Notes: a model not told the origin generated them from the sequence alone. 64,000 nt of DNA from Setoptus koraiensis (GCA_048013815.1 CM106585.1:11904001-11968000); one strand, 5' to 3'. Shown: positions 2,533 through 64,000, counted from the first letter of the stretch. Made by a program: numbers and translations.

Positions 2533-3153
2533 AGAATATTCCAAAGCTTATGCCATTATATTGATATGCATGCTTGTAAGTTAATGGAATTGGAGAATCA
2601 TCTTGATCTAACAGATTATAATTAGATACGAAGGGAAATATGACTATACAGAGATGGTAGGATTTATGCGAGGTATTCTCGATGGGACCAAAATGTCGTG
2701 TCGACCAAAATGCAGTTAGGGCAATGTAAGATGTTATTAGGTCGTCCATTTTGTAAACAACGTGCATAATGAATTTTGAGAGATATTTTTGCACGATTAC
2801 ATATGAGGATCAACAATTTAATCAACAAGCGGTCGCAGAAAGTTGCGACAAAACCGGACTGTCACCTGTAGACGAGCGGTTCTTTCTTGAACTCGACACA
2901 CTGTACAAAGACATTGGCAGATTCTCACACAGTACATGTACACACTTTTATGCTAGAAACGAGCACAACATCCAACTAGATAATTGTCATCTAGAAATAG
3001 AATGAATGTTTTTCTCCTAGAGAATCAGGCGAAATTGTTGAAAAAGACACCTAAGACCAAGATTGAGTGGATCCAACAAGATCGAGCTTTGAGTAAAATA
3101 TCTTGAGGATTAGTGAATCCCAGAAAAAATTCTTGCTGACAAACTTTTTGTTA

Positions 3154-4335
3154 TTATTGCAAAGATGTGGGTTTATCTTCATTCATATCATCGCGAGACA
3201 AATTGTCAAAGTAGTCCGCCACTTCAGCATACTCGTTAGCATCGTACGAACTCTCGACGGGTTCCCATCGGTGAGCTTCATCGTGAAGTATTTGGTCCCT
3301 CCGTGTTTTTCTGGCCATGCTAGTGTTCTTCTTGCGCTGGCGAATCAAAAAATCTTTCATGAGTTGCAATCTTGTGTCCGGATCGGGTGTGTCATCTGGC
3401 TTACTACTGTCATTTGTTTGCTGGATGAACATAGAGTTAGTCCATTCGGATGGAGGTAATGGGTCGCTGACGGCTCGGAATTCTCTGCTTGCAGCCGCCC
3501 GCTGTTTAGCCAGGTTGTTCAGTACTTTTTGATATAGTGATACGTAATCAAGTCCCAGCGCATGGTTGTCCATATCAGGCGGACAGTGGAACAAGGGCCT
3601 CGTGTCATCGATGTCATTTTTGTTCAATTCATTCTGCGTCGTCTTAGCATTGTATAATCCATTCGCTTGCTTAGTCTGAAGCTCTTTTGAGTTGCTTTTT
3701 TCTGTTCCTTTATCGGCTTTATCCAGTAGTCTTGCCAAGACTAGATCAACTGCGGCAGCTTTATCATAGATGAAATTTATCGGGGGTACCCTACCAGTTA
3801 GTTGGCGCTCACTAATACTCTTACTAAGTGTTGATGTAAAGGTGTTCAGTTCTTTGACTAGTTTATCAAGATCTTGCCTAGAAGATGAATAGTAAATATC
3901 TATGCCTTTCATAAAGGCTTTCGTCTCGATACTGGTGATTTTAACATCGAGATCTTCCAATCTGAGTCGCAAACTCTCTGTTGAAACTACATCACTGATT
4001 ATTTCAGTGTAATGCCTGTTGAGTACAATTTGCCTCCTCGTTATGTGTTTGATATTGACATGTTTGCTTTGTTGCAATAATTGAGGCGCCCCTTTGTGTA
4101 TATTAATAGAAACATCTGGTTTCAATTGGAACGTATCTCTAGGTTTGTTTTTCCACAAGCCCAGTAATTTTTTCATCTGACCAACCTGCTTGGTCAGCAT
4201 GGACGTCGGCCTGACGAATTGGGACGGCATCCTGGGGTAAATCTGGCTTGTCAGGTCGAAACAACAAAGATAATAATTAAATTCCCATGTTGATTTAGGT
4301 CTCGGCATGTAGTTTGGCTCGTTTTTATTGTTCAT
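3154..4335 (-). CDS. RBFA: Mitochondrial ribosome-binding factor A-like protein
   Basis: The central segment RRQIVLNRHYTEIISDVV...KITSIETKAFMKGIDIYYS...LSKSISERQLTGRVPPINFIYDK resembles the RbfA KH-like core of metazoan mitochondrial RBFA. The true start codon is uncertain. Confidence 0.72.
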   Translation of the reverse strand: MNNKNEPNYMPRPKSTWEFNYYLCCFDLTSQIYPRMPSQFVRPTSMLTKQVGQMKKLLGLWKNKPRDTFQLKPDVSINIHKGAPQLLQQSKHVNIKHITRRQIVLNRHYTEIISDVVSTESLRLRLEDLDVKITSIETKAFMKGIDIYYSSSRQDLDKLVKELNTFTSTLSKSISERQLTGRVPPINFIYDKAAAVDLVLARLLDKADKGTEKSNSKELQTKQANGLYNAKTTQNELNKNDIDDTRPLFHCPPDMDNHALGLDYVSLYQKVLNNLAKQRAAASREFRAVSDPLPPSEWTNSMFIQQTNDSSKPDDTPDPDTRLQLMKDFLIRQRKKNTSMARKTRRDQILHDEAHRWEPVESSYDANEYAEVADYFDNLSRDDMNEDKPTSLQ

Positions 4336-37219: not shown

Positions 37220-38962
37220 ATGGACAGCCCACGCCTGCACGACCTTCACGCTCAAGCCAGGGAGGCCGCGGAACGGTTGGAGAAACTCAGAGATGAAGGC
37301 TATCAATTGCTGGCAAAACACGACCAACTGAAGAAAAAAATCGATCAGACAATCGGCATCGAGTTTCTGGACAAATTCAATGCCTCACAACAGTCACATT
37401 GGCTCATCAACAGATTGCGAAAGATCAAAGATATCCATTTGTACTTGGAGGCAAAATTCGAATCATTAGATCTGTTGGATATTATAAGTAAATTTCAAGA
37501 GTTAGCAAAATGTTGCACAGAACTATTTATATTCAAGGCATGCCAATTTGACGTGTACGCTAACAATGTTCTTGTTTTCTGGAAGAATAAGCTCACCACT
37601 AGACTTTCGGACGAGTTCACCAAAGAATACTTCTCCAAAGTCAAATGGCCCAAGGTGCCCATCAACAAAATACAACATTCCTCCAAGAGCTCACCAGTTG
37701 CGCCCTTTCAGTCAATAATAGAAAAGTTCAAACTTTATATCAAAATCCTAATAATATTATCAAGCACTGAAACGTTGAACGACAAACCGCTAGACAATTC
37801 CAAACAAATCTGCTATCCCATACGTTTGATGTTGGAGCCAATCAAGGTCCGTTGCATCCACCATTTTATAAAGTCATCCAAAACGAATATACTAGCCAAG
37901 CCGGAATGGTACATGAATCTTGCCCTCAAGTGGATAGATGAAAACGCCAAATTCATTCAGGATGTAGTAGATCCAGTCGTGGGCGAATTCAGTCAGTACC
38001 CAGGTGCCTATCTGCAATTTGTTATGGGCATGATTGAGTTGGTGGCCATGCGACTCAAAGAGGACATAGTCAAAGTATCTAAAGGCATAGCAGACTCAGA
38101 GGATCCAAGTAGATGCGAACTTTATAATGGCATAGATTACAATAATATCTTCATTCAGATTTACACCGAGCTTACGATCTTTCTCAAGGAGATAAGAAAT
38201 CTCATCGGTGATGATAATTATTATAACTTTGAAGAATCACACGATTTATTAGCGATTTTGCTGGACAAACAAGAATTCGCAGAAAAAATTCTTGATCTGG
38301 AACGTAGTGGCGCTTACAAGCTTATCAAATCGATCACTTCATCTGATACATGCTGGAAACGACTGCTAGATGACGAGTTCGATGATCAGTTCAAAATCAC
38401 AGAATGTACTGATAGATTTATTCTCATGATACAATCCATATCTGAACGCCTGGAAAGTTTCAAACTGATTGATATTCAGCATCAGCTTGTCGAGCTCTTA
38501 TGTGATTTATTTGAGAGCTTTCTCGACAAACTCGAGAGCAAACTTCCCAGATTTGGATCAACGCAATTTGTCAAGGAATTATTCCTACTAGATCGTGCTT
38601 ATGGACTCGAAGGTGTTCAAAGAGGACTTAGACATCCCTATTTCTCCATACTAAACAATGTCAACTTTATACGTATGATCCTTCATGAACGTTCATTCTT
38701 GACGCAGCGCGTTCTTGACAATCTCGACAAGAATCCCAGTTTAGTCAAGGCTATTAGTGAGATATCGTCTAGGTACAAGCAACAATATAACGACATGATA
38801 GAGTATACTCTGGCTGTTTATGATGAATCAGAATGTGAATTAGGGTCGTTTTTGAGTTATGTCAAACCTCAAGTGCCTCAAAACGTTTACGAACATATTA
38901 AAGACGAAGCACAAAAGAGGTATCAGGAAAAGAAAACAAGGAGGCTTCTTTCAATGGAATGA
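37220..38962 (+). CDS. RINT1: RINT1/TIP20-like ER-Golgi tethering (NRZ complex) subunit, 580 aa, intronless
   Basis: PIRLMLEPIKVRCIHHF...KTNILAKPEWYMNLALKWI matches the RINT1/TIP20 signature. The protein has an N-terminal coiled coil and a helical body. Confidence 0.88.
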   Translation: MDSPRLHDLHAQAREAAERLEKLRDEGYQLLAKHDQLKKKIDQTIGIEFLDKFNASQQSHWLINRLRKIKDIHLYLEAKFESLDLLDIISKFQELAKCCTELFIFKACQFDVYANNVLVFWKNKLTTRLSDEFTKEYFSKVKWPKVPINKIQHSSKSSPVAPFQSIIEKFKLYIKILIILSSTETLNDKPLDNSKQICYPIRLMLEPIKVRCIHHFIKSSKTNILAKPEWYMNLALKWIDENAKFIQDVVDPVVGEFSQYPGAYLQFVMGMIELVAMRLKEDIVKVSKGIADSEDPSRCELYNGIDYNNIFIQIYTELTIFLKEIRNLIGDDNYYNFEESHDLLAILLDKQEFAEKILDLERSGAYKLIKSITSSDTCWKRLLDDEFDDQFKITECTDRFILMIQSISERLESFKLIDIQHQLVELLCDLFESFLDKLESKLPRFGSTQFVKELFLLDRAYGLEGVQRGLRHPYFSILNNVNFIRMILHERSFLTQRVLDNLDKNPSLVKAISEISSRYKQQYNDMIEYTLAVYDESECELGSFLSYVKPQVPQNVYEHIKDEAQKRYQEKKTRRLLSME

Positions 38963-51793: not shown

Positions 51794-54700
51794 TTAGTTA
51801 GTCCAATAGTAGTTGGAATAATGAGAAGGTATGTAGCTAGGCGGAGTGACCTGCTGTTGGGGCGCCAGCTGATGGTGGTGTTGTTGTTGTTGCAGAGACG
51901 GTTGTTGCTGCTGCTGTTGTTGCTGTTGTTGCTGTTGTGAGTGTTGTTGTTGTTGTTGTGGGTGTTGTTGTTGCTGGTGGTGGTGGTGGTGGTGATTGTG
52001 TGGGAGTGAATTTTGTGCGACACTCGTGGCGGCCTTCCTCTGCCTGGCGCGTCTATTACTGAACCAAATTTGGACCCGATTCTCTGGCAATTGTGTCCTC
52101 TGAGCGAGCTTCTCTCTAACCTCGACATTGGGATATTGTTCGCGCAAAAATTCCTTCTCGAGCTCGTCTATTTGTTTGGGCGTAAATGATGTGCGCGATC
52201 GTCGCTGTTTCGCTTGCTCTCGTTTCTCCCGAGTGCTAAGACCGTCGTTGGTGTTTGTGTCGCTGGCCGTATCATCGGCCTGACCGTTGTCGGTTTCGTC
52301 GTCGCCGGTGGCGTTGTTGTCCGCCAGGGCGAGCGCATCGCCACTGTTGTCCGTGTCATTGTTGACGATGTCACTGTTGCTGTGATTGTGATTGTTGTTG
52401 CTGTTGCTGCTGTTGTGATTATTTTGCTGCCCCTGGTGGCCGTAATCGGCCTGGTCGGCGGCGCCCAACAACAGGTTACCGGCAACAGGTTGCGGGTCAA
52501 GCGGGTGCTGATATGCGGTCGTCGTGGTCGGTTGTTGCTGTTGTGCGCCGGTCAGTTGTTGCGCGCCCGGTTGTTGCTGTTGCGCCGCCAGTAGGTGGTG
52601 CTGCTGATGGTGATGAAGCGGATGGTGCGCGCCCGGGTGAGCGCGCCCGTGGCTGTGGGCATGGTGCAGTTGCTGGTGGTGGTGGTGGTGGTGGTGATAA
52701 AATTGATGGTGATGCTGGTAGCCTATAAAATGTGATTGCCATTTAATGATCGCCATACCAAACGGGCCAATCGATCGGTGCGGATCGCGTCAATCGATCG
52801 GTGCGGATCGGGCCAAACGAAGTGGCGTCGGGACGGCGCAGGCCGGCGACGGGTGCGATGAGAGGAGAGATGGAGGTTAGAGCGAGATTTGAGTGTGTCG
52901 AGATTGAGTGTGCTGTGCTATGCGGTTCGTGCGGATCGAGTGTGTTTGCCGGCTGGGCGCGGCCCGCAGTGTCGGCCCGACCGGCACGGTGTCTAATGGT
53001 CTGTTTGGGCGCTGCCAGCTGACCAGTTGTGTCGCTGGCGGCGGCGCCGCCGCTCGTTGTTTGTGCGCGCTGCTGACACGTTAATTATTCAAATCACGGC
53101 CAACACTGGCCGTGATTTGTGATTTGAATACTCATCATCAGGTAGCAAAGGTGCGTTGGCGTGTTGTCGTGGCTGGCCCGTCAACTGACCAGCGGTCAAT
53201 TGGCGGCTGTAACGGCCGCGCGTGCGTGTGTGTGTGTGTCACCCATGGCTAGTTGGTGCCACTTGCCCACTTGTTTGCTGGCGCTGCTTTGTTTTCGCTG
53301 GCCCGCAACTGTCTTTCGGCGGCCGCGCGCTAATGATCCCAAAGAGAAGCCGTTGCCGCTGCGCTCTGTCCGCTCTGTCCCGTCTGGCCGCTCGCCGGGC
53401 TCGCGGACAAACCAATCGCGACCGGCAGCGGACGAGCGGCCGGTCCGGCGTGTTTGTTGTGTCAGTCGTGGCAGCTCGCGCTGTCCAACAGCCACCAGTA
53501 CAAAGCCAAAAACAACAAACATCCTAGGGGAGAGTTAATCTCCTCAAGGTGAATTCGCCGCCGACTAACTGTACTAATCAACGCGGCTCGGGTGACAGCC
53601 CAGCGCTGTGTACCCTATAGTGCGCATGCTTTATTGTCGGGGCGCTGGGTGCGAGCGGGCCGGCCGCTGCGGCCATCTCCGCGTCGAGCCCCCGCGGTCG
53701 CCTGCGATCACCGGGGCCGGACTCGCGGCCCGACTCGAAGCGCAAGTCGAGCGGCGACCCGAAATCGCGCGAGCGGCCCGAAATCGCGCGAGCGGCCCGA
53801 AATTGCGACCGATGCGACACCGCGTCACGATCTCGGCTGCGGCCTCACCTGTGCCCGGCGCCCCGACAATAAAACATGCGCACTATCCGGCCCGGCAATC
53901 GCAGGCGACCGCGCGTTGGGGCCCGATCTCATCTGGACGCAGCTCGTGGCGTCATATGGCACAGTGCACGGTGGCACATATGGTCTCGTTTATCTGGCCG
54001 CACAATTGTGCCAATGGGCCGCCGGTGCGCGGCGACACTTGTTCACCGTGTGGCCCGTCCAATTAGCGCCCGCGATAGTGTTCCATCAAGTGGTCAGCGA
54101 CCCCTCGTGTCGTTAAGCGGCGAACGTTCATTAAGATTTGTGACAGTGTTCTGGTTGAGTGGGCCTTTTGGGTCAGCGGACGGGCTGGACATGTTGCAGT
54201 GATAAACACTTTAATTAGCGCCGGGCCAGCCGGCCCGTTCGGCCGCACATTCGGGCCGAACGGGCGCGACAAATGATCGCGTTATAGGCGCTAATCTGTC
54301 GTGTTCTCACGCGCATTGTTTCTCGTTGTCGTGGCGAGCGTGCGACTGGCCAGAGGCCAAATAAACTAGATCTGGGGCTGCGTCGAAGCGTCGAGCGTCG
54401 AAGGTTCGAGCGTCGAAGAATCGAAGCAGCGCAAAATCGAACGCCGAACGCCGAACGCCGAGAAGTCGAACGCCGAACGAAGCAGCGAAGAGCTGATTGA
54501 GTGGACGATGATTTACTTGTTGTCACTACTGTTTTGCGTGCCGGTTGCACCCAATTCGAGCCGGCTCTCGACCGTCTCAACGGTCGAGCGAGCGGAGCGC
54601 CCGCGAGGGCGACCTTTCGACCGCTTGGGCCGACGCGTCGCGTCCAAACAGACAGATTGGCCCAAATCGGTTGCCGGCGGCCCGAAATAAACACCTTGTT

Positions 54701-57700
54701 TGTGTTTATTTTGACAGCACGCCAGATTATAGCGCCATAAAGCTAATTTAATCCTCCGGAGCGAGCTCCAGTTTGCCGCTCGCTGCCATCGATCACTCGG
54801 CGCTCTGTCCGCCGCCGGTCGCCGGCCCGGCCCGAGCACCCGGTGGTGGGCGCCGTCGGGTTCTGGGACGGCCGCGCGACAGTCGCGACGATCGCGGCGC
54901 GGTTAATTAATCAACTGCTAATCAAGGCGCTCATTGATGAGCGCGCCGGTCGCGCGGTTGCGGCGCTGCGCCGACAGGAATGCCAATCAATGGCCGGTCA
55001 ATCGTTGATCAATCGCTTTGCGCTTTGCGGCCAAATTTGCATGAAAAATGAAATGACCAATCCGACGACAAAGTGACAAAATGAATTTGATTCGTAAAGG
55101 GCAACGGCGAAATTGATTGAAATTCAATTTGGCCGCGCGCCGCTCGCCGGCCAATTTTGCCAATTTTGCCAATTTCGCCGATTTTACCGTTACCTGTCCT
55201 TTCAAGTGAGCCGATGGCCGGCCGGCGATTTGTGATTTGTGAACGGCGCATATTTTGCGAGCCGACATTATTGTTTCTGTTAACATATCGCATATAAACG
55301 CATATCATCGCTTGTATCGGCGCAGATCGCCGGCTCGAATCGGGCTCACAAATTGTGTGAGTCACAACGAGCGGTATTTATTATCGCGGCGCGGTGATCA
55401 TCGGCATTCGGTGCCGCTGACGACTGCTCATTTCTGGCACTCTCGGCATGCCATCAATCGCACTCGCGCCGGCCCGATCGGCTGCGGGCCGACGATTGGG
55501 CCGACGATTGATGGCGGCCGAACGAGCGGCTTCGATTGTTGCGCGGCGAGCGGCTTCTATCGGGCTGTTGCGAGCGGCGATTGTTGCGCAGCGGCCGCGC
55601 TTCTGGCGCAACATGGGCGACTCGCTGCGGGCCGGGCGTCGTCACGACGGCTCGCTCCGGCCGGCGCCCGACAACAACGCCGACAACAACAGCGACAACA
55701 ACAGCAACAACGACGACAACAACTGCGCCGACAATGCGGCTCGCGCAACTCGGCCCGGCGGTCGCCTACGGTGCGCGCGGTGTGTGATCCCGGCGACTCC
55801 TTGATCCAGCTCGGCCGAGTTTGATCCAGTTCGATCTGATTTGATCCAGTTTGATCCAGTTCGGCCGGTCGCTGTTGTCGCCGTCGTTGCTGTTGCTGCT
55901 GTTGTTGCGGAGTCACTGGCTGGCAGTTTCTCGACAGTGTTATCGCTCTATCGCTGGCAGTTAAACGACGGCGTGGTGCCGACAAAAGAAGTCAAACCAT
56001 CAGTGCAATATGATAATCTGTTTCCATTGTTGTCACTCGCTGATTGGCCGGCCCGACGACGGCGACCGCGTCGCCGCTGCTGTTGTCGCTGTCGTGGTTG
56101 TTGTTGTTGTTGTTGTTGAGGTCGCAGTTGTTGTTGTTGGGCCGCTGTTGTTGTTGTTGGGCCGCTGTTGTTGTTGTTGGGCCGCTGTTGTTGTTGTTAG
56201 CGTTGCCGGGTCGCCGGCGCTGCCGTGGGCGGCCGGCCCGCGCGCCGGTAACATTAACAAATGGCATTAACCTTAATGGTGGCACCGGTTAAATGGTTTG
56301 CGTATGTGTATCACACGACGCGGCAAACAAGCCACAAACGAGCCGCCAACATCGACACCTCTCGGCGCGTCCATTATTTATCCGCTCAAGCGCGCACAAT
56401 GTGGGCCCGGCGCCTTTCGGGCTCCGCTCCACAATTGTGCCCCCTCCGCGGGCCGAACAATTGACGTGAATGAGCGGCTCAAAGCCAACGAGCCGACACA
56501 AACAGCGACAACAATGAGCCGCAACAACGGCGACAACAACAACAACAACGGCGACAACAACACGACAACAACCACAACAGCGGCGACGACAACATTAACT
56601 TTGTAACATATGAGCAGATTTATGTAGCGTCAACAAGCGCCGACGACAGCGCCGCGGCTCATGTAAATGTCATGTAAATGTTGTCGCGGGCACGCAAGCG
56701 GGCACACAAGTGGCCACCGGCGGACCAGACCCACCGGCGCGGTGCGGCCGCACCGCGCCGCGACGCGCACCAAACAATGGATTGATGAATGAATTTGGCG
56801 TTGCGCTCAATCATAATCAAGGGGGCAGAAGCAACGAGATAGAGAGACTCGAGTAGCGGCGCTGGGGCGCGATCCAGTCCGCGCCGGGACCACCTACGGC
56901 GGCCGCCAGTCTAGCCACTCGACGGCCCGACAGACCGATCGATCTCGGCCTAATTGCGGCCGGCGAGCCGACGCAACCCGAGCGCCGCCACTCTCGCTGC
57001 TCGCCGCTCGCCGGCGCCCGAGCTCGCTGCTGGCCGGCGCTCGGGCTTGCGATGTCGCGCCGCATCGGCACATCAGCGCGCAGCAACGTCAACGCGCGAC
57101 ATCGATCGTCGCGGCACCGGCCATCGGGCCGACACCGTCGGTCGGGCCGAATCAATCTGGCGGCCGGGCACGCAGCGACGGCCCGAACGGACCCAAATGC
57201 ACCCAAATGGATACATCGCTCACGGCGGACACGTCGCTGTCGTCGGCGCGAATGTCGCCGATGCCACCGATGCCACATTTGCGACATACGAGGCGATTCG
57301 TGCTCGCTGTATGCTCGCTGTATGCGCTGACGGCCAGCGTCGGCCCCACCGGCGGCCCCATTTGGGCGCCGCCAGTGTCGCCAGTTAGTTAGTGGGTCGC
57401 ATTAGTTGGCCGGCCGCAGCCGCGTCGCCCGTGCGCTCGGGCCAGAAAGTATCCGTTGGCCGCGCGCGGCTCTCGTTCCGATCGGTGGCAGCGTCGCCGG
57501 CGACAGCAACGGGCGAATTCAAAAAATTTGTTTCTTATAATTAGCCATGACGCGTAACGTCGCGCGTCCATCACCGGCCTGCACGGCGCTGCCATTGTGG
57601 CCCGTTCTCTGGCTGCCCGTTCGCTGGCTTTTCGATCTCTGGCAGCCCGTTCTTCGGCTGCTCGTTCTTCGGCTGGCTCAGCTCGCGGCCGCCGGTTCGG

Positions 57701-59912
57701 TGTTTGGGGTTCGGCGTTCGGTGGACGTGCCATCGACGCTGAATCGACGCCGAATCGGCGCTGAATCGGCGCTGCGTCGACGCCCGATCGAGGCTCGATC
57801 GAACGCCGAAGCGACGGCCAGGCAACGGGCTGCCGCACGGGTCGGCCGCGACAAATTCTCTCAATGAACCCAGCCCGACAATCACAATGATCGCCGGCCA
57901 GCACAATGGCACCGACAGCGATGAGATATGTGCGATTTGTGCGCCGTCAGCGCGTGCACCGCGGCACTAAAATTTTGATTTTATATCCAGTCGGCGGCCG
58001 CGAACAACAGACACCGCCGCGGCCGCTCTCGTTTAATGTGTCGCCCCTCGCGGTTGTTGTCCTTGTTATACAACAGCGACAACAACGGCGCCGACAGCCC
58101 GCGGACAAACGGAAACCGAACATTAACAATAACAACAACGCGGTGCTGTATGGGCTGCATGGGGGCGCTGCGCGTAATAAATTATCGCCGGCGCCTATAA
58201 TCGCTCTAATCTACTCTCTCGCGGGCCGCTCGCGCCGCCCACCGGTCGCCAGCGCCCGCTTATAGATCAGCTGACAGGGCCGATCTATAGGGCGCAGCGG
58301 CGACAATTGGGGCCCGCGCGGGCCGCTCATATAGGCCTGCCCGCTGTTAATTGCGGCGTCTCGCTACTCACACTGTCTAATATTGTTTGTGTTATTCTGT
58401 CTTATATTATTGCGCGTGCATAATTAATTAACAAGTTCACTCACCTTGAATTTGCGCCTGATGAGCCCAGTGGGCCTGCTGATGTTGGTGCTCGTGCAAG
58501 CTGAACTGATTGCTCGTGGCCAGCTGATGCTGCGGGCTGGGACTGGCCGGGCCGGACTGCTTGGCGTGCATCGCCCCGGACTGGCTGCTGGCCAGCGGGC
58601 TGCCGCTCGACGGGACCGACTGGCCGGCGGGCACGCCCGCGCTGTCGGCGGCCGCGAGACAGCTCATCGGGTGATGGTGCGCATGATACGGGTACGGGCC
58701 GGCTTGCTGCTCCAATTGTTGCTGCGGTTGCGCCTGCTGCGGGTGCATGAGGTGCTGCTGCTGCTGGTGATGGTGCCCTATGGTAGAGCTGGGCATGTGC
58801 CCGGCGGCGAACTGCTTGTCGTGGTGGTGCCAGTCGGTCTGGTTGTTGAGCTGCTGCTGTTGCTGCTGCTGCTGATAGTAGTGCTGCGGTTGGGCGGCCG
58901 GTTGTTGTGGTTGTTGCTGTTGCGACGATTGCATCAGTGGCGCTTGCAACTGCAGTTGGGCTGACTTGTGTTGCTGGTGCAGTTGGTGCGGGTCCGGCGC
59001 GGCTAACGGGCCCGGCAAGCCGATTGCGGCCAGTTGCGGGTCTTGTTTCATGCTGTCGGGCAGCGGTTGCGGGTGCTGCGGGCCGGTGGCCCAATTGCCA
59101 CCGGCGGCAACGGGTTGTTGCTGTTGTTGCTGGCTGTGCAAATAGTGATTGCTTAATTGTTGCTGATGCTGGCTCAATTGTTGCTGGCTGGCCGTTATTA
59201 CACCTGCCGCCGCTGCTGCGGCAGCGGCCGCAGCCACGGTGGCCGCCGACAGGGCGCCCGACGAGCCCGTGGAGTCGCTGGTGGCGCCGCCGCTAGACAG
59301 GTGATGCTGGTGTTGCGCTTGCTGATGTTGCGCTTGCTGGTTGTGCAAGCTCTGGTGGTGATGGTGGTGGTGGTGGTTGTGATAGTGTTGTTGTTGCTGT
59401 TGTTGTTGCTGCTGTTGCTGGCTGTCGAGCTCCTCGATGGCCTTCTGAATGGAGTTTTTCTTCTTGCTGCCACCTATAATGCCCGGCTGAATGTGACCGG
59501 TTTGCTGCGCGGGCCGGCGGGCGGGTTGGCGACGACGCAACGACGGTAGCGGATATAGGTCGGTACGCGGGTGAGGTGCACGGGTAAGTTAGTTGTGGTT
59601 ATATTTTTGAAAATTAGAGTATATATAGGGGGGCGTGCAACAATCTTGTTGGGGTGCACTTACCTGGTAGCGGGTGAGTATTTTCGAGACGCAACCGTGC
59701 GACACCTTCAACTGTCGGCTGATCTGGCAAGGCCGCGTGCCGTGTCGGTGCATCTCCACTATCTTGGCTCGGATTTCTTGGGGCAGGGGGCGCCCGTTGA
59801 TGTAGTTGCCGCCCAGCTGATTGGTGCGGCCCTGGCCCTGGTACGGGAAGGCGACATAGTTGTTGATGAGGTAAGGCCTGAAGTGGTGCTGGTGGCTGCT
59901 CTCGTGTCCCAT
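51794..59912 (-). CDS. Pax3/7: Pax3/7 (paired/gooseberry group) transcription factor, 745 aa; exons 59912-59664, 59504-58445, 52722-51794
   Basis: PAI subdomain [45 protein letters not shown]|[14 protein letters not shown] and an S50 homeodomain [10 protein letters not shown]...LAQRTQL...[11 protein letters not shown]. Donors CAG|GTAAGT (59663) and AAG|GTGAGT (58444) and acceptors CGCAG (59506-59505) and TTTTATAG (52724-52723) keep the frame. Extra small exons in the 5.7-kb intron cannot be excluded. Confidence 0.88.
55801..55860. repeat. 10-bp tandem repeat (TTGATCCAGT), 6 degenerate units, in Pax intron 2
   Basis: ttgatccagc tcggccgagt ttgatccagt tcgatctgat ttgatccagt ttgatccagt. Confidence 0.8.
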
Positions 59913-60047
59913 GCTGCCGCTGCTGTGCAAGCTGCCGTCTATGGCTGAAAATATGCGCTTGTCACTGGTGGCTGTATTGTATGTACTGGAGGCTGGCGAG
60001 ACGCCTTCGACGTCGCAATTCGACTGCGATGTGCGACACTTGAGCGT

Positions 60048-60169
60048 GATTTCGGCGTGATTTTGCGCGATTTCGCGTGATTTTTCTGCGATTTCGCGTG
60101 ATTTTTGCGTGATTTCGGCGTGATTTTTCTGCGATTTCGTGTGATTTTTGCGCGATTTTGGGGTGATTT
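60048..60169 (-). repeat. Helically phased array of 12 AAATC motifs upstream of the Pax3/7 ATG
   Basis: GATTT on the + strand starts at 60048, 60059, 60069, 60079, 60090, 60100, 60111, 60122, 60133, 60143, 60154 and 60165; mean spacing 10.6 bp. Confidence 0.9.
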
Positions 60170-60321
60170 GAACTCGATTAGAACACGATTCGGAGGCGAT
60201 TCGAGTGCGTCGTCGGCGGATCTGGACGCGATTCGGTGCTGCGATCGGTCGCCAAGATTCGGCTGTGATTCGGCCACTCGAGTAACTGGGTTGGGTGCGC
60301 GCTGGTGCAAGCTCACTCGTC

Positions 60322-60366
60322 AACTGAACTGTCGGCTGGCTCGCCGATGATGCGGCCACTTTATTT
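60322..60366 (-). promoter_or_regulatory. Candidate Pax3/7 core promoter (arthropod initiator TCAGTT with an A-rich box about 35 bp upstream)
   Basis: Minus-strand TCAGTT at 60327-60322 and AAATAAA at 60366-60360. This is a motif match only. Confidence 0.3.
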
Positions 60367-62906
60367 GAGTTGACTTTGCTGCCACCGCATAAGATGCTGC
60401 CGCTGGTGCGCGGTGCGTGGTGCACGGCCGGCCGGGGGGGAGGGCGAGGGGCAGGCAGCGCCCTTGTGGTTTGCCACTGGCGCGTTCGAAGCGTTCGGAG
60501 TGTTCGCACAGTTCGCAGCGCGTTCGAGTGCCCTTTCGAAGCGTTCCATCGAAGCGGCGCTCGGTCGCGCTTGTTCGCGCATGTTCGCCCTGCCCGTACT
60601 GCGTCTATCTATAGTCGACTCTAAGCCAGTGTCGCTCTTTCGCGGCGCGCCGATATTCCCTCTGTGGTGCCCGTTGCCGCCGCCGCCGCTATAATGGCAC
60701 TATAACACTGCTACAATGTTACAATCGCCGGACGGCCGGCCGGCCGGTCGCGGGGTCACTTTGTGCCCGCCTATCCCACGTGTGCGTATCTGTCGCACAG
60801 CCGGGCCGGCCCGGCCCGAGAGCCGCTCCCGAGCCACTACTGTTCGATCACTTGGGCAGCTCAATATACTCGCCGACAGCGGCGCACAATGACAGGTAAA
60901 TTTCAGGTAAACAGTGCGCTTAATGATGCTTGTGAGTTGCGACTTTTTGCCTCTTGTTGCTTTGTTTTTGCTCCACTGGTGCCCATGCAAACAAACCTGA
61001 CAGTGTCAGGCTTAATGCTGCAGCGAGCGGCGCACAAAATGTTTGTTTTGTCTCTGTCGCTTCGGTTGGCTTCGCTGGCCCTTTGGCCTCTCGAGCCGCG
61101 ACTCGAGCGACTCGCCCGTTGTCGCGCTGGCTGGTGGTTCGGTGGCCATTTTCGAAGCCGAACCCCGCGACAGCGGCCAACACCATTGTTTGCCCGTGTG
61201 TCACTGCCGGTAACAAATGGTTTGCCAACTCAACAGGTGACAGGTCGCGTGCTGTATGCCAGCCAGAGAGAGAAATATGCCGACATTGTTGCAATGATAT
61301 CGTCATCGACATTGGGCAAACACAGCGCCAGAGACAAACAAGGCCCATTGTTTGCCCAGTGGCTGCCAATTGTTATTGATGGTGGCGCGCGGAGGCGACA
61401 CAAACCAATAGCGCACATAGGCAATCAGTTGGCCGATAATGATGAGCAATAATTCACGACGCCCCCGAGCCATGAATTATTATTGAAAATTGCCCACTTG
61501 CCTCGCGTTCATTCATCAATAATGAATGAAAAAATTGGGCAAAAATTTTGCATTTCATGATCGCGAAATGATCGCGCCAGACGCCAGTCAGCGCGCCAGC
61601 AACTCGACGTGTGTCGAGCAGTCAACTCGGGCAACTACTCGAGCGGCCAATTCAGTGCCGGCCGATACCCAAAGTGCTCACCTGTCCGCCTGCAATGATT
61701 TATGTGGCGCTGACACTGGCGGGGTGGCCAGTGCGCGCGGCCGAGCCAGCCGAACGATCATTAATAACTGTCATTCGACTTCCTATCCCCCTGCCCATAG
61801 TTCCAACGGCCGTCACTGTGTGGCCACTGCATTACATCATTGCCGAATCGGACTGTTATGATGCAACAAGCGCGGTGCGATATGATGTGATTGCGAACCT
61901 GTTGTTTCAATGTCGTCGTTTCGACATCGAGCCAGCCGGCTCTCCGACTAACGAGCCTCCGTCGACGGCGTTCCTCAGCGGGCTCGTCGGGCTCAGCGGT
62001 ACCCGAGGTGCGCCACACACTGGCGCTCACTGGCGCTCAACGGCGGCCACAAGCTCTCAATGCCAACGATCTCTGGTGCGCCACTTGTCCACTGGCGGCC
62101 AGGTGCGCAACTAGACGCTGGCCGGCTGAACAATAACGACGCGTGCCTCCGTATCCAAGGCGACCGCAACTTGCGCAAGTGACACTTTCGGGTGTGTATG
62201 TGCCGGCACAATTTCATCGCCGCGACATCGGCGGGCCGTTTATTTCGCCGTTGAAATAAAACGGAATATTCCCCATTATTTATTTATAATTTTTTCAAGC
62301 GGAATAAACGGCCCGATGTCGCGGCAATGAAATTGGCCCGCTGCTGGGCGAGCACGATGCCCAACGCACCCAACGGAGCGTGATCGAGCGGCACGGAACT
62401 AGGCGAACTCGGCAAGTCGCTGTTGCAGAGATAAGCGGCATAAACGCCGAGATAATTAGTTGTCGAGCGCAATAATCGTATCGTGGCTGGCAACGTTTGA
62501 AGGTGTGCGATGGCAAGTGTTTTTTGTTTTTTGCTCGAGCTTTGCCAGTGTTTGTGTATGTGTGCGATATGTGTTGTTAGATTGCGTGTTAGATTGCGTG
62601 TTAGATAGCCTTCGAGACACGATGAGGCATCGGCCGAGATCAGATATCGTCGTTGTTTGCCGAGACAAGTCTCTCCACGCAAAGCCAGTGCCGAGTGTCG
62701 ATTGAAGCGACATCATTAACTGATAGGCGACGACGACAACAACAACAACAACAATAGATGCCGAGCCGAAAACTCAAGCAATTGTCAAGGCCGACAGTAT
62801 CACATATCTTGCATATCTGGTTGTGGCGTCAGGCCTTTTACGGCGCACATTCGTAACTGTGATTCGCCAATGTTGTTCTCCCTGTGTAAATATCAGTTTT
62901 GTTGCC

Positions 62907-63084: not shown

Positions 63085-64000
63085 ATGGTGCAATACATGT
63101 TACGAAGAAACTCTGCTGAACATAAAGCCAATTATTCACGTGCGAAATCTTCGTTGGAGCTAGCGGTTGTTGTGCTGTGTTTGGCAACAACAACCACGCG
63201 ATTTTTATTGCAGTGCAGTGTTTCGGGACTAGAATTGGAGATCGCGCTGCTGCGCCACGACACATCGGCAAACGGCTCACAAGTGGCGGAAATGGACGAC
63301 AGGGCCAAAACGATCTATTCCGATCTGTACAGACAGGCGGTCGGGGGCCAAGTTAAATTTTTCGACCCGATTATCCAGCAAAACAATGCCAGCGAACAGA
63401 CAACATGGACACAACAAGCCGGCAGCCAGTACCTGATGAAACTGAGCATTGATCTCGGGGCCAACCGCACAACGTCGCTGAAATTGTTTGATTTCTTGGT
63501 CGACTGCGAACTCAGACTGGACGCTCGCCCGCTGCTGAACCGTTATCACCGGCCCGGCGGCGGCTTGGCGAGTCTGTTTTGGCGCAGTTACGTCAGTTAT
63601 GTCAGAATAACCAATGCGAGCAGCGAGGAATCGGCCATGATCGCGCCCAACGATGGCGCCCCCATGGCGTGTCAGTACGGGCATCGGGGGCACGACAGCA
63701 ACAACAGCAACAAGATCACTCTGACGGTCAACATAAACAACGCGGCCAGCAAGAGCGGCCCCGCGGACAGTCCGTTGTTTTTGTTGAAGCTTCAGAAAAT
63801 TTTATCCTCGCTCATGGATTTGGAGACGCTGATGCTGATAATTCTGGCCGTTTGGCTGCTCGTTTGTCTGGTGATCGCCATCATGATAAAGCGACGCGAC
63901 AAGCGACGAATGCGCCTGTTCCTGGCGCACGCCCGAGAGGACAACATCAACAGCGACAACGACCAACAATACGACGATTGTCGCCGGCGCCGCTGGTCCA
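63085..64000 (+). CDS. Uncharacterised type I membrane glycoprotein, 5' part (>305 aa, runs off the window; not in the ORF track)
   Basis: Manual translation from ATG 63085 is stop-free to the window end. It shows a signal-like segment LELAVVVLCLATTTTRFLLQCSVSG, N-glycosylation sequons (NGS, NAS, NRT, NAS), a TM helix LMLIILAVWLLVCLVIAIMI and a stop-transfer KRRDKRR. Confidence 0.8.
   Translation, partial: MVQYMLRRNSAEHKANYSRAKSSLELAVVVLCLATTTTRFLLQCSVSGLELEIALLRHDTSANGSQVAEMDDRAKTIYSDLYRQAVGGQVKFFDPIIQQNNASEQTTWTQQAGSQYLMKLSIDLGANRTTSLKLFDFLVDCELRLDARPLLNRYHRPGGGLASLFWRSYVSYVRITNASSEESAMIAPNDGAPMACQYGHRGHDSNNSNKITLTVNINNAASKSGPADSPLFLLKLQKILSSLMDLETLMLIILAVWLLVCLVIAIMIKRRDKRRMRLFLAHAREDNINSDNDQQYDDCRRRRWS

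What the first reader, a model, noticed from the sequence alone, without database searches (positions are those of the whole stretch)
58445..59912. Pax3/7 protein with PAI and homeodomain but no RED subdomain or octapeptide
After GIIGGSK the sequence gives only a degenerate first RED helix (IQKAIEEL, compare VEKKIEEY) and then runs into about 330 residues of poly-Q/H/A. The FSWEIRDRL helix-turn-helix and the HSIDGILG octapeptide are not visible in any exon or in the intron ORFs I could read. PAI also has unusual substitutions ([14 protein letters not shown]). Eyegone-type Pax proteins lack an intact PAI, whereas natural loss of RED in group III is not something I recognise. Drosophila Paired is known to work largely through PAI plus homeodomain, so the truncated protein could be functional with altered specificity. 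This would be relevant to reduced segmentation if the animal is a four-legged eriophyoid.
Basis: partly seen in the sequence, partly recalled or inferred. Interest (0 to 1): 0.72.

Follow-up and report, generated by a model that had tools for sequence, protein, structure and literature searches.

The report
Mite Pax3/7 gene without RED subdomain
This mite carries a developmental regulator of the Pax3/7 (gooseberry/paired) family that keeps its first DNA-binding half-domain and its homeodomain but has replaced the second half-domain and a co-repressor motif with a long glutamine-rich stretch, and related gall mites share this layout.

Summary
On the minus strand lies a three-exon, 745-codon Pax3/7-type gene. 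Exon 1 (59912-59664) holds the PAI subdomain. Exon 2 (59504-58445) holds the linker plus about 330 Q/H/A-rich residues. Exon 3 (52722-51794) holds a paired-type Ser50 homeodomain.

A RED profile, tblastn and an octapeptide pattern find no RED core and no octapeptide in any frame of the 64-kb window. The same profile finds RED at E 1e-39 in a canonical mite gene.

The architecture is not private to this genome. The annotated Fragariocoptes setiger (Eriophyoidea) protein has it, as do about 30 unnamed assemblies. Seven fetched loci all show PAI followed by a homeodomain, with no RED.

Two paralogue types exist, a slow one (A) and a fast one (B). The window gene is type B.

Exon 2 is flanked by introns of the same phases as the Dinothrombium exon that encodes linker, RED and octapeptide, and the upstream one also lies at the same place. 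So RED was lost inside a retained exon.

No RNA data exist, so the splicing is inferred. It is open whether any RED-bearing Pax3/7 remains in these mites.

I found no paper describing this. Aphid gooseberry-neuro-like proteins show an independent, partial RED decay. The scan had not noted this before on other DNA.

The parts
59664..59912 (-). Exon 1: start codon, the N-terminal [16 protein letters not shown] motif and the complete PAI subdomain (83 codons). It ends CAG|gtaagt, phase 0.
   Evidence: Pfam PAX positions 1-59, E 2.4e-27. Best solved match is the Drosophila Prd paired domain 1PDN, residues 1-58, E 5.6e-24. Sequence read. All 31 alignment-invariant PAI residues are kept, including the SHGCVSKIL recognition helix.
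59505..59663 (-). Intron 1 (159 nt, gt..ag), between RYQ and the linker.
   Evidence: Read. The same position and phase are found in Dinothrombium canonical Pax3/7 and in F. setiger.
58445..59504 (-). Exon 2: linker [14 protein letters not shown], a possible vestige of the first RED helix ([10 protein letters not shown], 59456-59427), then about 330 residues of Q/H/A/S-rich low complexity. It ends CAAG|gtgagt, phase 1. It stands where canonical genes encode linker, RED and octapeptide.
   Evidence: Stop-free over 353 codons. RED profile hit covers positions 2-35 only. The AlphaFold2 model has no compact fold (pLDDT 51.6, pTM 0.23). Relatives' ORFs end at the same ..QG|gt boundary. Independent DNA contigs show 0 substitutions and one 3-nt indel here.
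52723..58444 (-). Intron 2 (5.7 kb). It contains no RED or octapeptide coding potential. It holds high-copy CAA/CAG-type repeats at about 55.5-55.9 and 56.5-56.7 kb.
   Evidence: Six-frame RED profile, tblastn and pattern scans. Repeat depth.
51794..52722 (-). Exon 3: the acceptor ttttatag|GC completes a Gly codon with the G of exon 2. It carries an H/Q-rich and acidic stretch, the paired-type homeodomain (52207-52028, Ser50, no intron) and a Q/H-rich tail. Stop codon at 51796-51794.
   Evidence: Pfam Homeodomain E 5.3e-22. Best single-homeodomain solved matches are Pax3 3CMY (E 3.2e-19) and Prd 1FJL (E 3.9e-19). Sequence and frame read.

Best explanation
The window encodes a real, conserved member of the Pax3/7 (gooseberry/pairberry) family. 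The exon that ancestrally carried linker, RED subdomain and octapeptide has kept its splice sites, its frame and the linker, but its RED and octapeptide coding sequence has been replaced by a long glutamine/histidine/alanine-rich disordered stretch.

The product (about 745 residues) is a transcription factor. It contacts DNA through the PAI subdomain and the Ser50 paired-type homeodomain, which are tethered by about 530 disordered residues. It cannot make RED-type DNA contacts and lacks the EH1/octapeptide that recruits Groucho. So it most likely acts as a PAI-plus-homeodomain activator on composite or nearby paired and homeodomain sites, as engineered Drosophila Paired without RED does.

The loss is old. 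It is shared by two paralogue types (A slow, B fast) in eriophyoid-type mites, and the window gene is the fast type B.

What is shown: domain content, absence of RED and octapeptide, homology of the exon, and conservation of the layout. What is inferred: the splicing, and the DNA-binding mode and activator role.
For: - Domains and absence of RED and octapeptide. Positive control for the RED profile: Dinothrombium locus, E 1.3e-39.
- In-frame splice model with consensus sites.
- Exon homology: the Dinothrombium canonical gene has the same phase-0 intron after RYQ. A phase-1 intron follows its exon encoding linker, RED and octapeptide.
- Conserved architecture: the F. setiger protein P0013 runs PAI, low complexity, homeodomain. 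Loci L001, L003, L005, L007, L009, L041 and L043 all have PAI then a homeodomain on one strand within 1.2-5 kb and only linker hits to the RED profile.
- In about 30 relatives the ORF stays open from PAI through 100-250 low-complexity residues to the same ..QG|gt boundary.
- Constraint: all invariant PAI residues and the homeodomain core (F8, L16, F20, W48, F49, N51, R53) are kept.
- Polymorphism: in run X2, 0 substitutions in 958 exonic nt against 11 in 2957 intronic nt, and the one exonic indel is 3 nt. In run X1, the single exonic change (59739) is synonymous.
- Type-B assignment: PAI tree, flanking RINT1-like and another gene shared only with the type-B locus L005, and shared substitutions.
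- Types A and B co-occur in one metagenome.
- Mechanistic precedent: Prd lacking RED rescues segmentation, viability and fertility (PMC4345280).
Against: - No RNA run holds this locus, so no junction is observed. The exon 2 to exon 3 join spans 5.7 kb and rests on frame, consensus sites and comparison.
- The only spliced relative (P0013) is a computational model whose 3' end is wrong.
- PAI (74-79% identical to relatives) and the homeodomain (65% to canonical, 48% to type-B L005) evolve fast. This could mean relaxed constraint rather than new function.
- The polymorphism contrast is small (P about 0.03).
- Except for F. setiger, the relatives are unnamed assemblies, so 'eriophyoid-wide' is an inference.
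- I could not search the rest of this genome, so a RED-bearing Pax3/7 elsewhere is not excluded.
Confidence: 0.75

Rival explanations
1. PAI and the homeodomain belong to two separate transcription units: a PAI-only gene ending in the Q-rich exon (like nematode NPAX) and a downstream paired-like homeobox gene.
For: No RNA evidence links them. The gap is 5.7 kb. PAI-only Pax proteins exist in nematodes (PMC4901127). The exon-3 ORF has an in-frame ATG at 52756.
Against: PAI and the homeodomain are collinear on the same strand in all eight loci of both paralogue types, some only 1.2-1.5 kb apart. The phase-1 donor of exon 2 and the acceptor at 52723 join in frame, and the phases match the canonical Dinothrombium gene. 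In the relatives read in full, the ORF ends within about 60 codons of the donor-like ..QG|gt, and in five of them it ends right at it. An intronless marine relative fuses PAI and the homeodomain in one ORF.
Confidence: 0.1
2. The gene is a decaying paralogue (a pseudogene or one on the way there). Its RED loss and fast evolution reflect loss of function, while another gene does the Pax3/7 work.
For: It sits on a long branch in the PAI tree and has the unique GGNYING and GHIQPG changes. Its homeodomain is only 65% identical to canonical. A slower paralogue type A exists in related mites.
Against: There are 745 codons without a stop across three exons, with consensus splice sites. Every invariant PAI residue and the homeodomain core are retained. 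Type-B orthologues are kept in at least three other assemblies with the same layout. There are no exonic substitutions against 11 intronic ones, and the indel is in frame.
Confidence: 0.07
3. A RED-encoding exon exists but was missed. It could be very small, strongly diverged, outside the window, or lost in an assembly error.
For: A weak linker-like peptide lies in intron 2 at 56810-56673 (E 0.07). Short-read contigs break at the CAG repeats of exon 2.
Against: No RED-core hit in any frame of 64 kb, nor in seven homologous loci, although the profile finds the control at E 1e-39. Exon 2 occupies the very exon that carries RED in the canonical gene. Independent contigs of three runs reproduce the sequence around both exon boundaries. 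The 56.7-kb piece lacks everything after the linker, has no plausible splice sites and is at chance level.
Confidence: 0.05

Closest known systems
Canonical acariform Pax3/7 (gooseberry-like/pairberry; e.g. Dinothrombium tinctorium, Leptotrombidium deliense, Brevipalpus obovatus proteins P0160, P0124, P0166)
   Same: N-terminal ..RPFL..YPFQGQGR motif, PAI, the ETGSIRPGVIGGSK linker and a Ser50 paired-type homeodomain. The intron after RYQ is at the same place and phase, and a phase-1 intron precedes the homeobox exon.
   Different: They carry a full RED subdomain and the KHTIDGILG octapeptide in the middle exon. The window gene has about 330 low-complexity residues there, an NNY insertion in the N-terminal motif and many substitutions.
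Fragariocoptes setiger 'Protein gooseberry-neuro, partial' (P0013) and about 25 unnamed type-A relatives
   Same: PAI, linker, low complexity, homeodomain, with no RED and no octapeptide. They share FRP[FY]L[AI]NNY and the same exon boundary ..QG|gt.
   Different: Type A is slow-evolving (PAI 84-88% identical to canonical, against 78% here; homeodomain 76-89% against 65%). Its homeobox is split by introns, and its flanking genes differ. The window gene is the fast type B by tree, synteny and shared substitutions.
Engineered Drosophila Paired without RED (prd-Prd deltaPBC; Li, Li and Xue 2015, PMC4345280; citing Bertuccioli et al. 1996)
   Same: A Pax3/7-class protein with PAI and homeodomain but no RED. 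Prd also naturally lacks the octapeptide and has a His-rich tail.
   Different: It is a laboratory deletion, not a natural allele. The paper shows RED is dispensable for segmentation, viability and fertility but needed for two accessory-gland genes. Nothing is known about the function of the mite protein.
Nematode NPAX proteins (PAI-only Pax; Hobert and Ruvkun 1999, as reviewed in PMC4901127)
   Same: Natural Pax proteins that kept PAI and lost RED.
   Different: As reviewed, they retain only the PAI domain, and two of them keep the EH1 motif. The mite gene keeps the homeodomain and lacks EH1, and it arose independently within arthropod Pax3/7.
Aphid, adelgid and phylloxeran 'gooseberry-neuro-like' proteins (e.g. 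Acyrthosiphon pisum, P0083)
   Same: Pax3/7-class with intact PAI and homeodomain, but RED reduced to about 33 residues without its recognition helix.
   Different: They keep the octapeptide (YSIDGILSG), have no poly-Q expansion and are insects, so the loss is independent.

Membership tests
Pax group III (Pax3/7, Paired, Gooseberry, pairberry) | N-terminal PAI subdomain of the paired domain (beta-hairpin plus helix-turn-helix) | tested here: met
   Pfam PF00292 positions 1-59, E 2.4e-27. Best solved match is Prd 1PDN residues 1-58, E 5.6e-24. All invariant residues are kept.
Pax group III (Pax3/7, Paired, Gooseberry, pairberry) | C-terminal RED subdomain completing the 128-residue paired domain | tested here: not met
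   No RED-core match in any frame of the window. The control locus scores E 1.3e-39. The AlphaFold2 model of exon 2 has no compact fold.
Pax group III (Pax3/7, Paired, Gooseberry, pairberry) | Octapeptide/EH1 motif between the paired domain and the homeodomain (present in Gsb, Gsb-n and Pax3/7; absent in Drosophila Prd) | tested here: not met
   Two patterns and tblastn with octapeptide-bearing proteins find nothing in six frames.
Pax group III (Pax3/7, Paired, Gooseberry, pairberry) | Complete paired-type homeodomain with Ser at position 50 | tested here: met
   Pfam PF00046 E 5.3e-22. The sequence reads WFSNRRAR. Best single-homeodomain solved matches are Pax3 3CMY and Prd 1FJL.
Pax group III (Pax3/7, Paired, Gooseberry, pairberry) | Descent from the Pax3/7 gene (orthology by gene structure and nearest relatives) | tested here: met
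   The named nearest relatives are gooseberry, gooseberry-neuro and Pax3 proteins. The N-terminal motif is shared with acariform Pax3/7. Intron position and phases around exon 2 match Dinothrombium Pax3/7. The 58-column PAI tree alone is poorly resolved.
PAI-only Pax proteins (nematode NPAX type) | PAI as the only DNA-binding domain, with no homeodomain | tested here: not met
   A homeobox exon follows in frame on the same strand, here and in seven related loci. The splicing itself is not testable without RNA.
Eyegone / Pax6(5a)-type Pax proteins | Truncated or absent PAI with an intact RED | tested here: not met
   The arrangement is the opposite: PAI intact, RED absent.

The most novel reading that the evidence does not exclude
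Eriophyoid mites have no RED-bearing, octapeptide-bearing Pax3/7 gene at all. After the loss inside exon 2, the gene duplicated into types A and B, so a whole animal lineage would carry out Pax3/7 functions (segment-polarity or pair-rule-like patterning, neurogenesis) with PAI-plus-homeodomain proteins only. This would be a natural counterpart of the Drosophila Prd delta-RED experiment, arising in the lineage with the most reduced arthropod body plan.
Probability: 0.35. Interest if true: 0.75.

Novelty: new variant of a known kind. Interest (0 to 1): 0.6.

Why it matters
The paired domain's RED half is conserved from sponges to humans, yet its role in Pax3/7 proteins is barely understood. In flies an engineered RED deletion still supports segmentation.

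A natural RED loss that has been kept for a long time in two paralogues across a mite superfamily shows that evolution has run the same experiment. An independent partial loss in aphids points the same way.

These genes offer material to ask three things:
- what RED and the Groucho-binding octapeptide contribute
- how target-site choice changes when only PAI and the homeodomain remain
- whether this is connected with the simplified segmentation and four-legged body of gall mites

It also warns annotators that 'gooseberry-neuro, partial' models in these mites are probably complete with respect to the paired domain.

Tried and rejected
- A second linker-like peptide in intron 2 (56810-56673, [18 protein letters not shown]) looked like a relic or alternative exon. 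It scores at chance level (E 0.07 with the profile, 1.4-4 with tblastn), is GC-rich, has nothing RED-like after it and has no splice sites. I rejected it.
- IQKAIEEL as a RED helix vestige is not significant without the linker and is absent in type-B relatives. I keep it only as 'possible'.
- RNA evidence: no RNA run holds the locus. Read laying could therefore only check the DNA.
- I tried to learn which species the unnamed contigs come from. Cluster look-up gave no accessions, and a paper search for six run, assembly and metagenome identifiers gave nothing.
- I tested for a RED-bearing Pax3/7 in the metagenome that holds both paralogue types, by scanning metagenome contigs with a RED alignment. 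None of the 30 confirmed loci came from that sample.
- Synteny between type-A loci and the window: none was found.
- Searching this scan's notes for other Pax genes of the genome gave nothing relevant.
- I looked up Brevipalpus P0166 to read a second canonical gene structure. It is not on record.
- Each exon was handled by reference.

Full report
**What is there**

The finding lies on the minus strand. The ORF list and Pfam scan give three coding pieces:
- An ORF at 59589-60509 whose last part matches the PAX profile, but only positions 1-59 of 125 (E 2.4e-27).
- An ORF at 58437-59540 that starts with the paired-domain linker and then runs through Q/H/A-rich sequence. Its PAX hit covers only positions 58-90 (E 0.034).
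- An ORF at 51794-52756 with a complete homeodomain (E 5.3e-22).

Reading the DNA gives an exact model.
- Exon 1 runs from the ATG at 59912 to 59664 (83 codons, CAG|gtaagt).
- Exon 2 runs from 59504 (after gcgcag) to 58445. It has 353 codons plus one base and ends CAAG|gtgagt, phase 1.
- Exon 3 runs from 52722 (after ttttatag). Its first two bases complete a Gly codon and continue the homeobox ORF in frame to the stop at 51796-51794.
- The total is 745 codons without a stop.

**Is RED really absent?**

I built a profile of the linker plus RED region from the 52 canonical Pax3/7 proteins returned by the homologue search. I searched it against every stop-to-stop piece of all six frames of the 64-kb window at very permissive thresholds.
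- Only exon 2 matches, at profile positions 2-35 (linker and first helix, E 6.8e-5).
- A chance-level linker-like peptide in intron 2 (56810-56673) scores E 0.07.
- Nothing matches the RED core.
- tblastn with full-length Tropilaelaps, fly and hemichordate Pax3/7 proteins finds only PAI and the homeodomain.
- Two octapeptide patterns hit nothing in any frame.
- The same profile finds RED at E 1.3e-39 in a canonical mite locus (Dinothrombium), so the test has power.
- An AlphaFold2 model of exon 2 has no compact domain: mean pLDDT 51.6, pTM 0.23, with only isolated long helices typical of poly-Q.

Logan DNA contigs of three public runs reproduce the exon sequences and both boundaries of exon 2. 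An assembly artefact is therefore unlikely.

**It is not private to this genome**

A search with the PAI part returned as best hits about 30 proteins from unnamed Logan, ENA and JGI assemblies. It also returned one named protein, 'Protein gooseberry-neuro, partial' of Fragariocoptes setiger, an eriophyoid mite.
- All of these run PAI, ETGSIRPGVIGGSKKS, then low complexity, with no RED.
- The F. setiger model continues into a homeodomain.
- Many of the genomic ORFs stop at or just after ..QGE or ..QGK. That is a read-through of the same phase-1 donor as here (..QIQG|gtgagt).

I fetched seven such loci. In each, PAI and a homeodomain lie on the same strand 1.2-5 kb apart, and the RED profile hits only the linker (L001, L003, L005, L007, L009, L041, L043).

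Other acariform mites are different. Leptotrombidium, Dinothrombium and Brevipalpus have the canonical protein with RED and the octapeptide KHTIDGILG. The Blomia and Halotydeus models keep the octapeptide but show only the first part of RED.

**How the domain was lost**

The Dinothrombium gene has three relevant features:
- A phase-0 intron lies directly after ..NRYQ.
- A single exon encodes linker, RED and octapeptide.
- A phase-1 intron then precedes the homeobox exon.

The window gene has the first intron at the same place and phase (also in F. setiger), and a phase-1 intron at the end of exon 2. Exon 2 is therefore the homologue of the RED exon. The RED and octapeptide coding sequence decayed or was replaced inside a retained exon, with frame and splice sites kept. 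No exon was dropped.

**Two paralogue types**

The relatives fall into two groups.
- Type A is slow. It includes F. setiger, and its PAI is 84-88% identical to canonical.
- Type B is fast (P0036, P0070, P0102).
- One JGI metagenome holds both, on contigs of 14.7 and 42 kb with similar G+C content. This suggests two genes in one genome.

The window gene is type B on three grounds:
- It groups with the B sequences in a PAI tree. The split from all other rows has support 88/91, but the tree has only 58 columns and long branches.
- Only the type-B locus L005 shares flanking genes with the window: a RINT1-like gene (window 37.8-38.95 kb) and another at 63.8 kb.
- It shares type-B substitutions: [12 protein letters not shown], loss of Arg in SIRPG, GGSK followed by basic residues, RTSFT, and VE[VI]RE in the homeodomain.

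It also keeps the [10 protein letters not shown]-terminal motif of type A. This ties both types to one RED-less ancestor.

I could not search the rest of this genome. So I do not know whether it also has type A or any RED-bearing Pax3/7. A metagenome scan with a RED alignment found none from the sample that holds both types, but that scan was truncated.

**Is it functional?**

Evidence for function:
- The ORF is open across 745 codons, with consensus splice sites.
- All 31 invariant PAI residues are kept, including the SHGCVSKIL recognition helix. The best solved match is the Drosophila Prd paired domain, 1PDN residues 1-58 (E 5.6e-24).
- The homeodomain core and Ser50 are kept.
- Type-B orthologues are retained elsewhere.
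- In the ORFs of relatives listed, the low-complexity region stays open up to the conserved donor.
- Run X2 shows 0 substitutions in 958 exonic bases against 11 in 2957 intronic bases (about 3.6 expected, P about 0.03), and its one exonic indel is 3 nt.
- Run X1 has a single exonic difference (59739), which is synonymous: GGC to GGA, Gly58.

Evidence against, or missing:
- There are no RNA data.
- The gene evolves fast.
- The polymorphism sample is small.

**Likely mechanism (inferred)**

PAI and the homeodomain are the two domains that must sit in one molecule for Drosophila Paired to work. Paired lacking RED rescues segmentation, viability and fertility, and fails only for two accessory-gland genes (PMC4345280).

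I therefore expect the mite protein to bind paired-type PAI half-sites and TAAT homeodomain sites, alone or as composites. The Q/H-rich spacer and tails would serve as activation or condensate-forming regions. Without the EH1 motif there would be no Groucho-dependent repression. The 530-residue tether should loosen the spacing constraints between the two sites. None of this was tested.

**Comparison with the literature**

- The review of homeodomain proteins lists many domain losses in the PRD class. For RED it names only nematode proteins that retained only PAI (PMC4901127).
- A 2025 survey of arthropod Pax genes mentions only a predicted butterfly Gsb isoform lacking the last 43 RED residues (PMC12486386).
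- The Aculops lycopersici genome paper does not mention Pax genes. It does note loss of the Orange domain in hairy-family factors (PMC7738191).
- I found no description of the RED-less mite genes.

In passing, aphid, adelgid and phylloxeran 'gooseberry-neuro-like' proteins have RED reduced to about 33 residues while keeping the octapeptide. An intronless marine-metagenome gene also fuses PAI directly to a homeodomain. Loss of RED in this class has therefore happened more than once.

**Verdict**

It is also less singular: this is one of at least two RED-less paralogue types, with convergent cases elsewhere. The link to reduced segmentation remains speculation.

Exons were handled separately by reference.

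Noticed in passing
window 56673-56810 (minus strand), inside intron 2: A peptide, [18 protein letters not shown], resembles the paired-domain linker GSIRPGVIGGSKPRVAT (profile E 0.07; tblastn E 1.4-4). It is GC-rich, with nothing RED-like after it and no splice sites. It is probably chance.
   Followed up: yes
window about 55500-55900 and 56500-56700: CAA/CAG-type repeats in intron 2 attract Logan contigs at summed depths of 40,000-88,000, against about 200 elsewhere. This indicates a very abundant simple-repeat or low-complexity family in this genome. Short-read contigs also break at the CAG runs of exon 2 (58720-58768, 59323-59424).
   Followed up: no
window 37820-38950 (+) and 63787-63924: A RINT1/TIP1-like gene and a second ORF have homologues next to the type-B Pax gene on a 42-kb JGI metagenome contig (L005). 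Microsynteny is conserved, with a change of relative orientation.
   Followed up: partly
proteins P0083, P0048, P0077, P0085, P0071, P0069 (aphids, adelgid, phylloxera): Annotated 'gooseberry-neuro-like' proteins keep PAI, octapeptide and homeodomain. RED is reduced to about 33 residues (..PEEVRDTTI.. is the only trace) and lacks its recognition helix. This is an independent decay of RED in an insect Pax3/7 paralogue.
   Followed up: partly
L040 (marine metagenome contig, 854 nt; protein P0119): An intronless 224-residue gene fuses a PAI subdomain to a paired-type homeodomain, with only about 25 residues between them and no RED. The organism is unknown. In the PAI tree it sits in an unresolved fork with the window sequence and two type-B proteins (P0070, P0102), on a long branch.
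   Followed up: no
L003 (Fragariocoptes setiger contig JAIFTH010000471.1) 2857-4084: The deposited gene model P0013 misses the second homeobox piece (about 3139-3204, DIYTRESLAARTQLTEARVQ) and ends in a spurious tail at 3980-4081. Its homeodomain looks truncated only because of the annotation.
   Followed up: partly
window 59628 and 60023-60074: Run X1 (same organism label) differs from the window by a 1-nt deletion in intron 1. It also has three insertions of 13-22 nt in the repeat array just upstream of the gene, showing length variation in the region another note describes as a phased AAATC array.
   Followed up: no
protein P0121 (JGI, 509 aa on a 1950-nt contig): A single ORF holds a complete canonical Pax3/7 unit followed by a second partial paired domain and the start of a homeodomain. 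This is either a tandem duplicate read through or a chimeric metatranscriptome contig.
   Followed up: no
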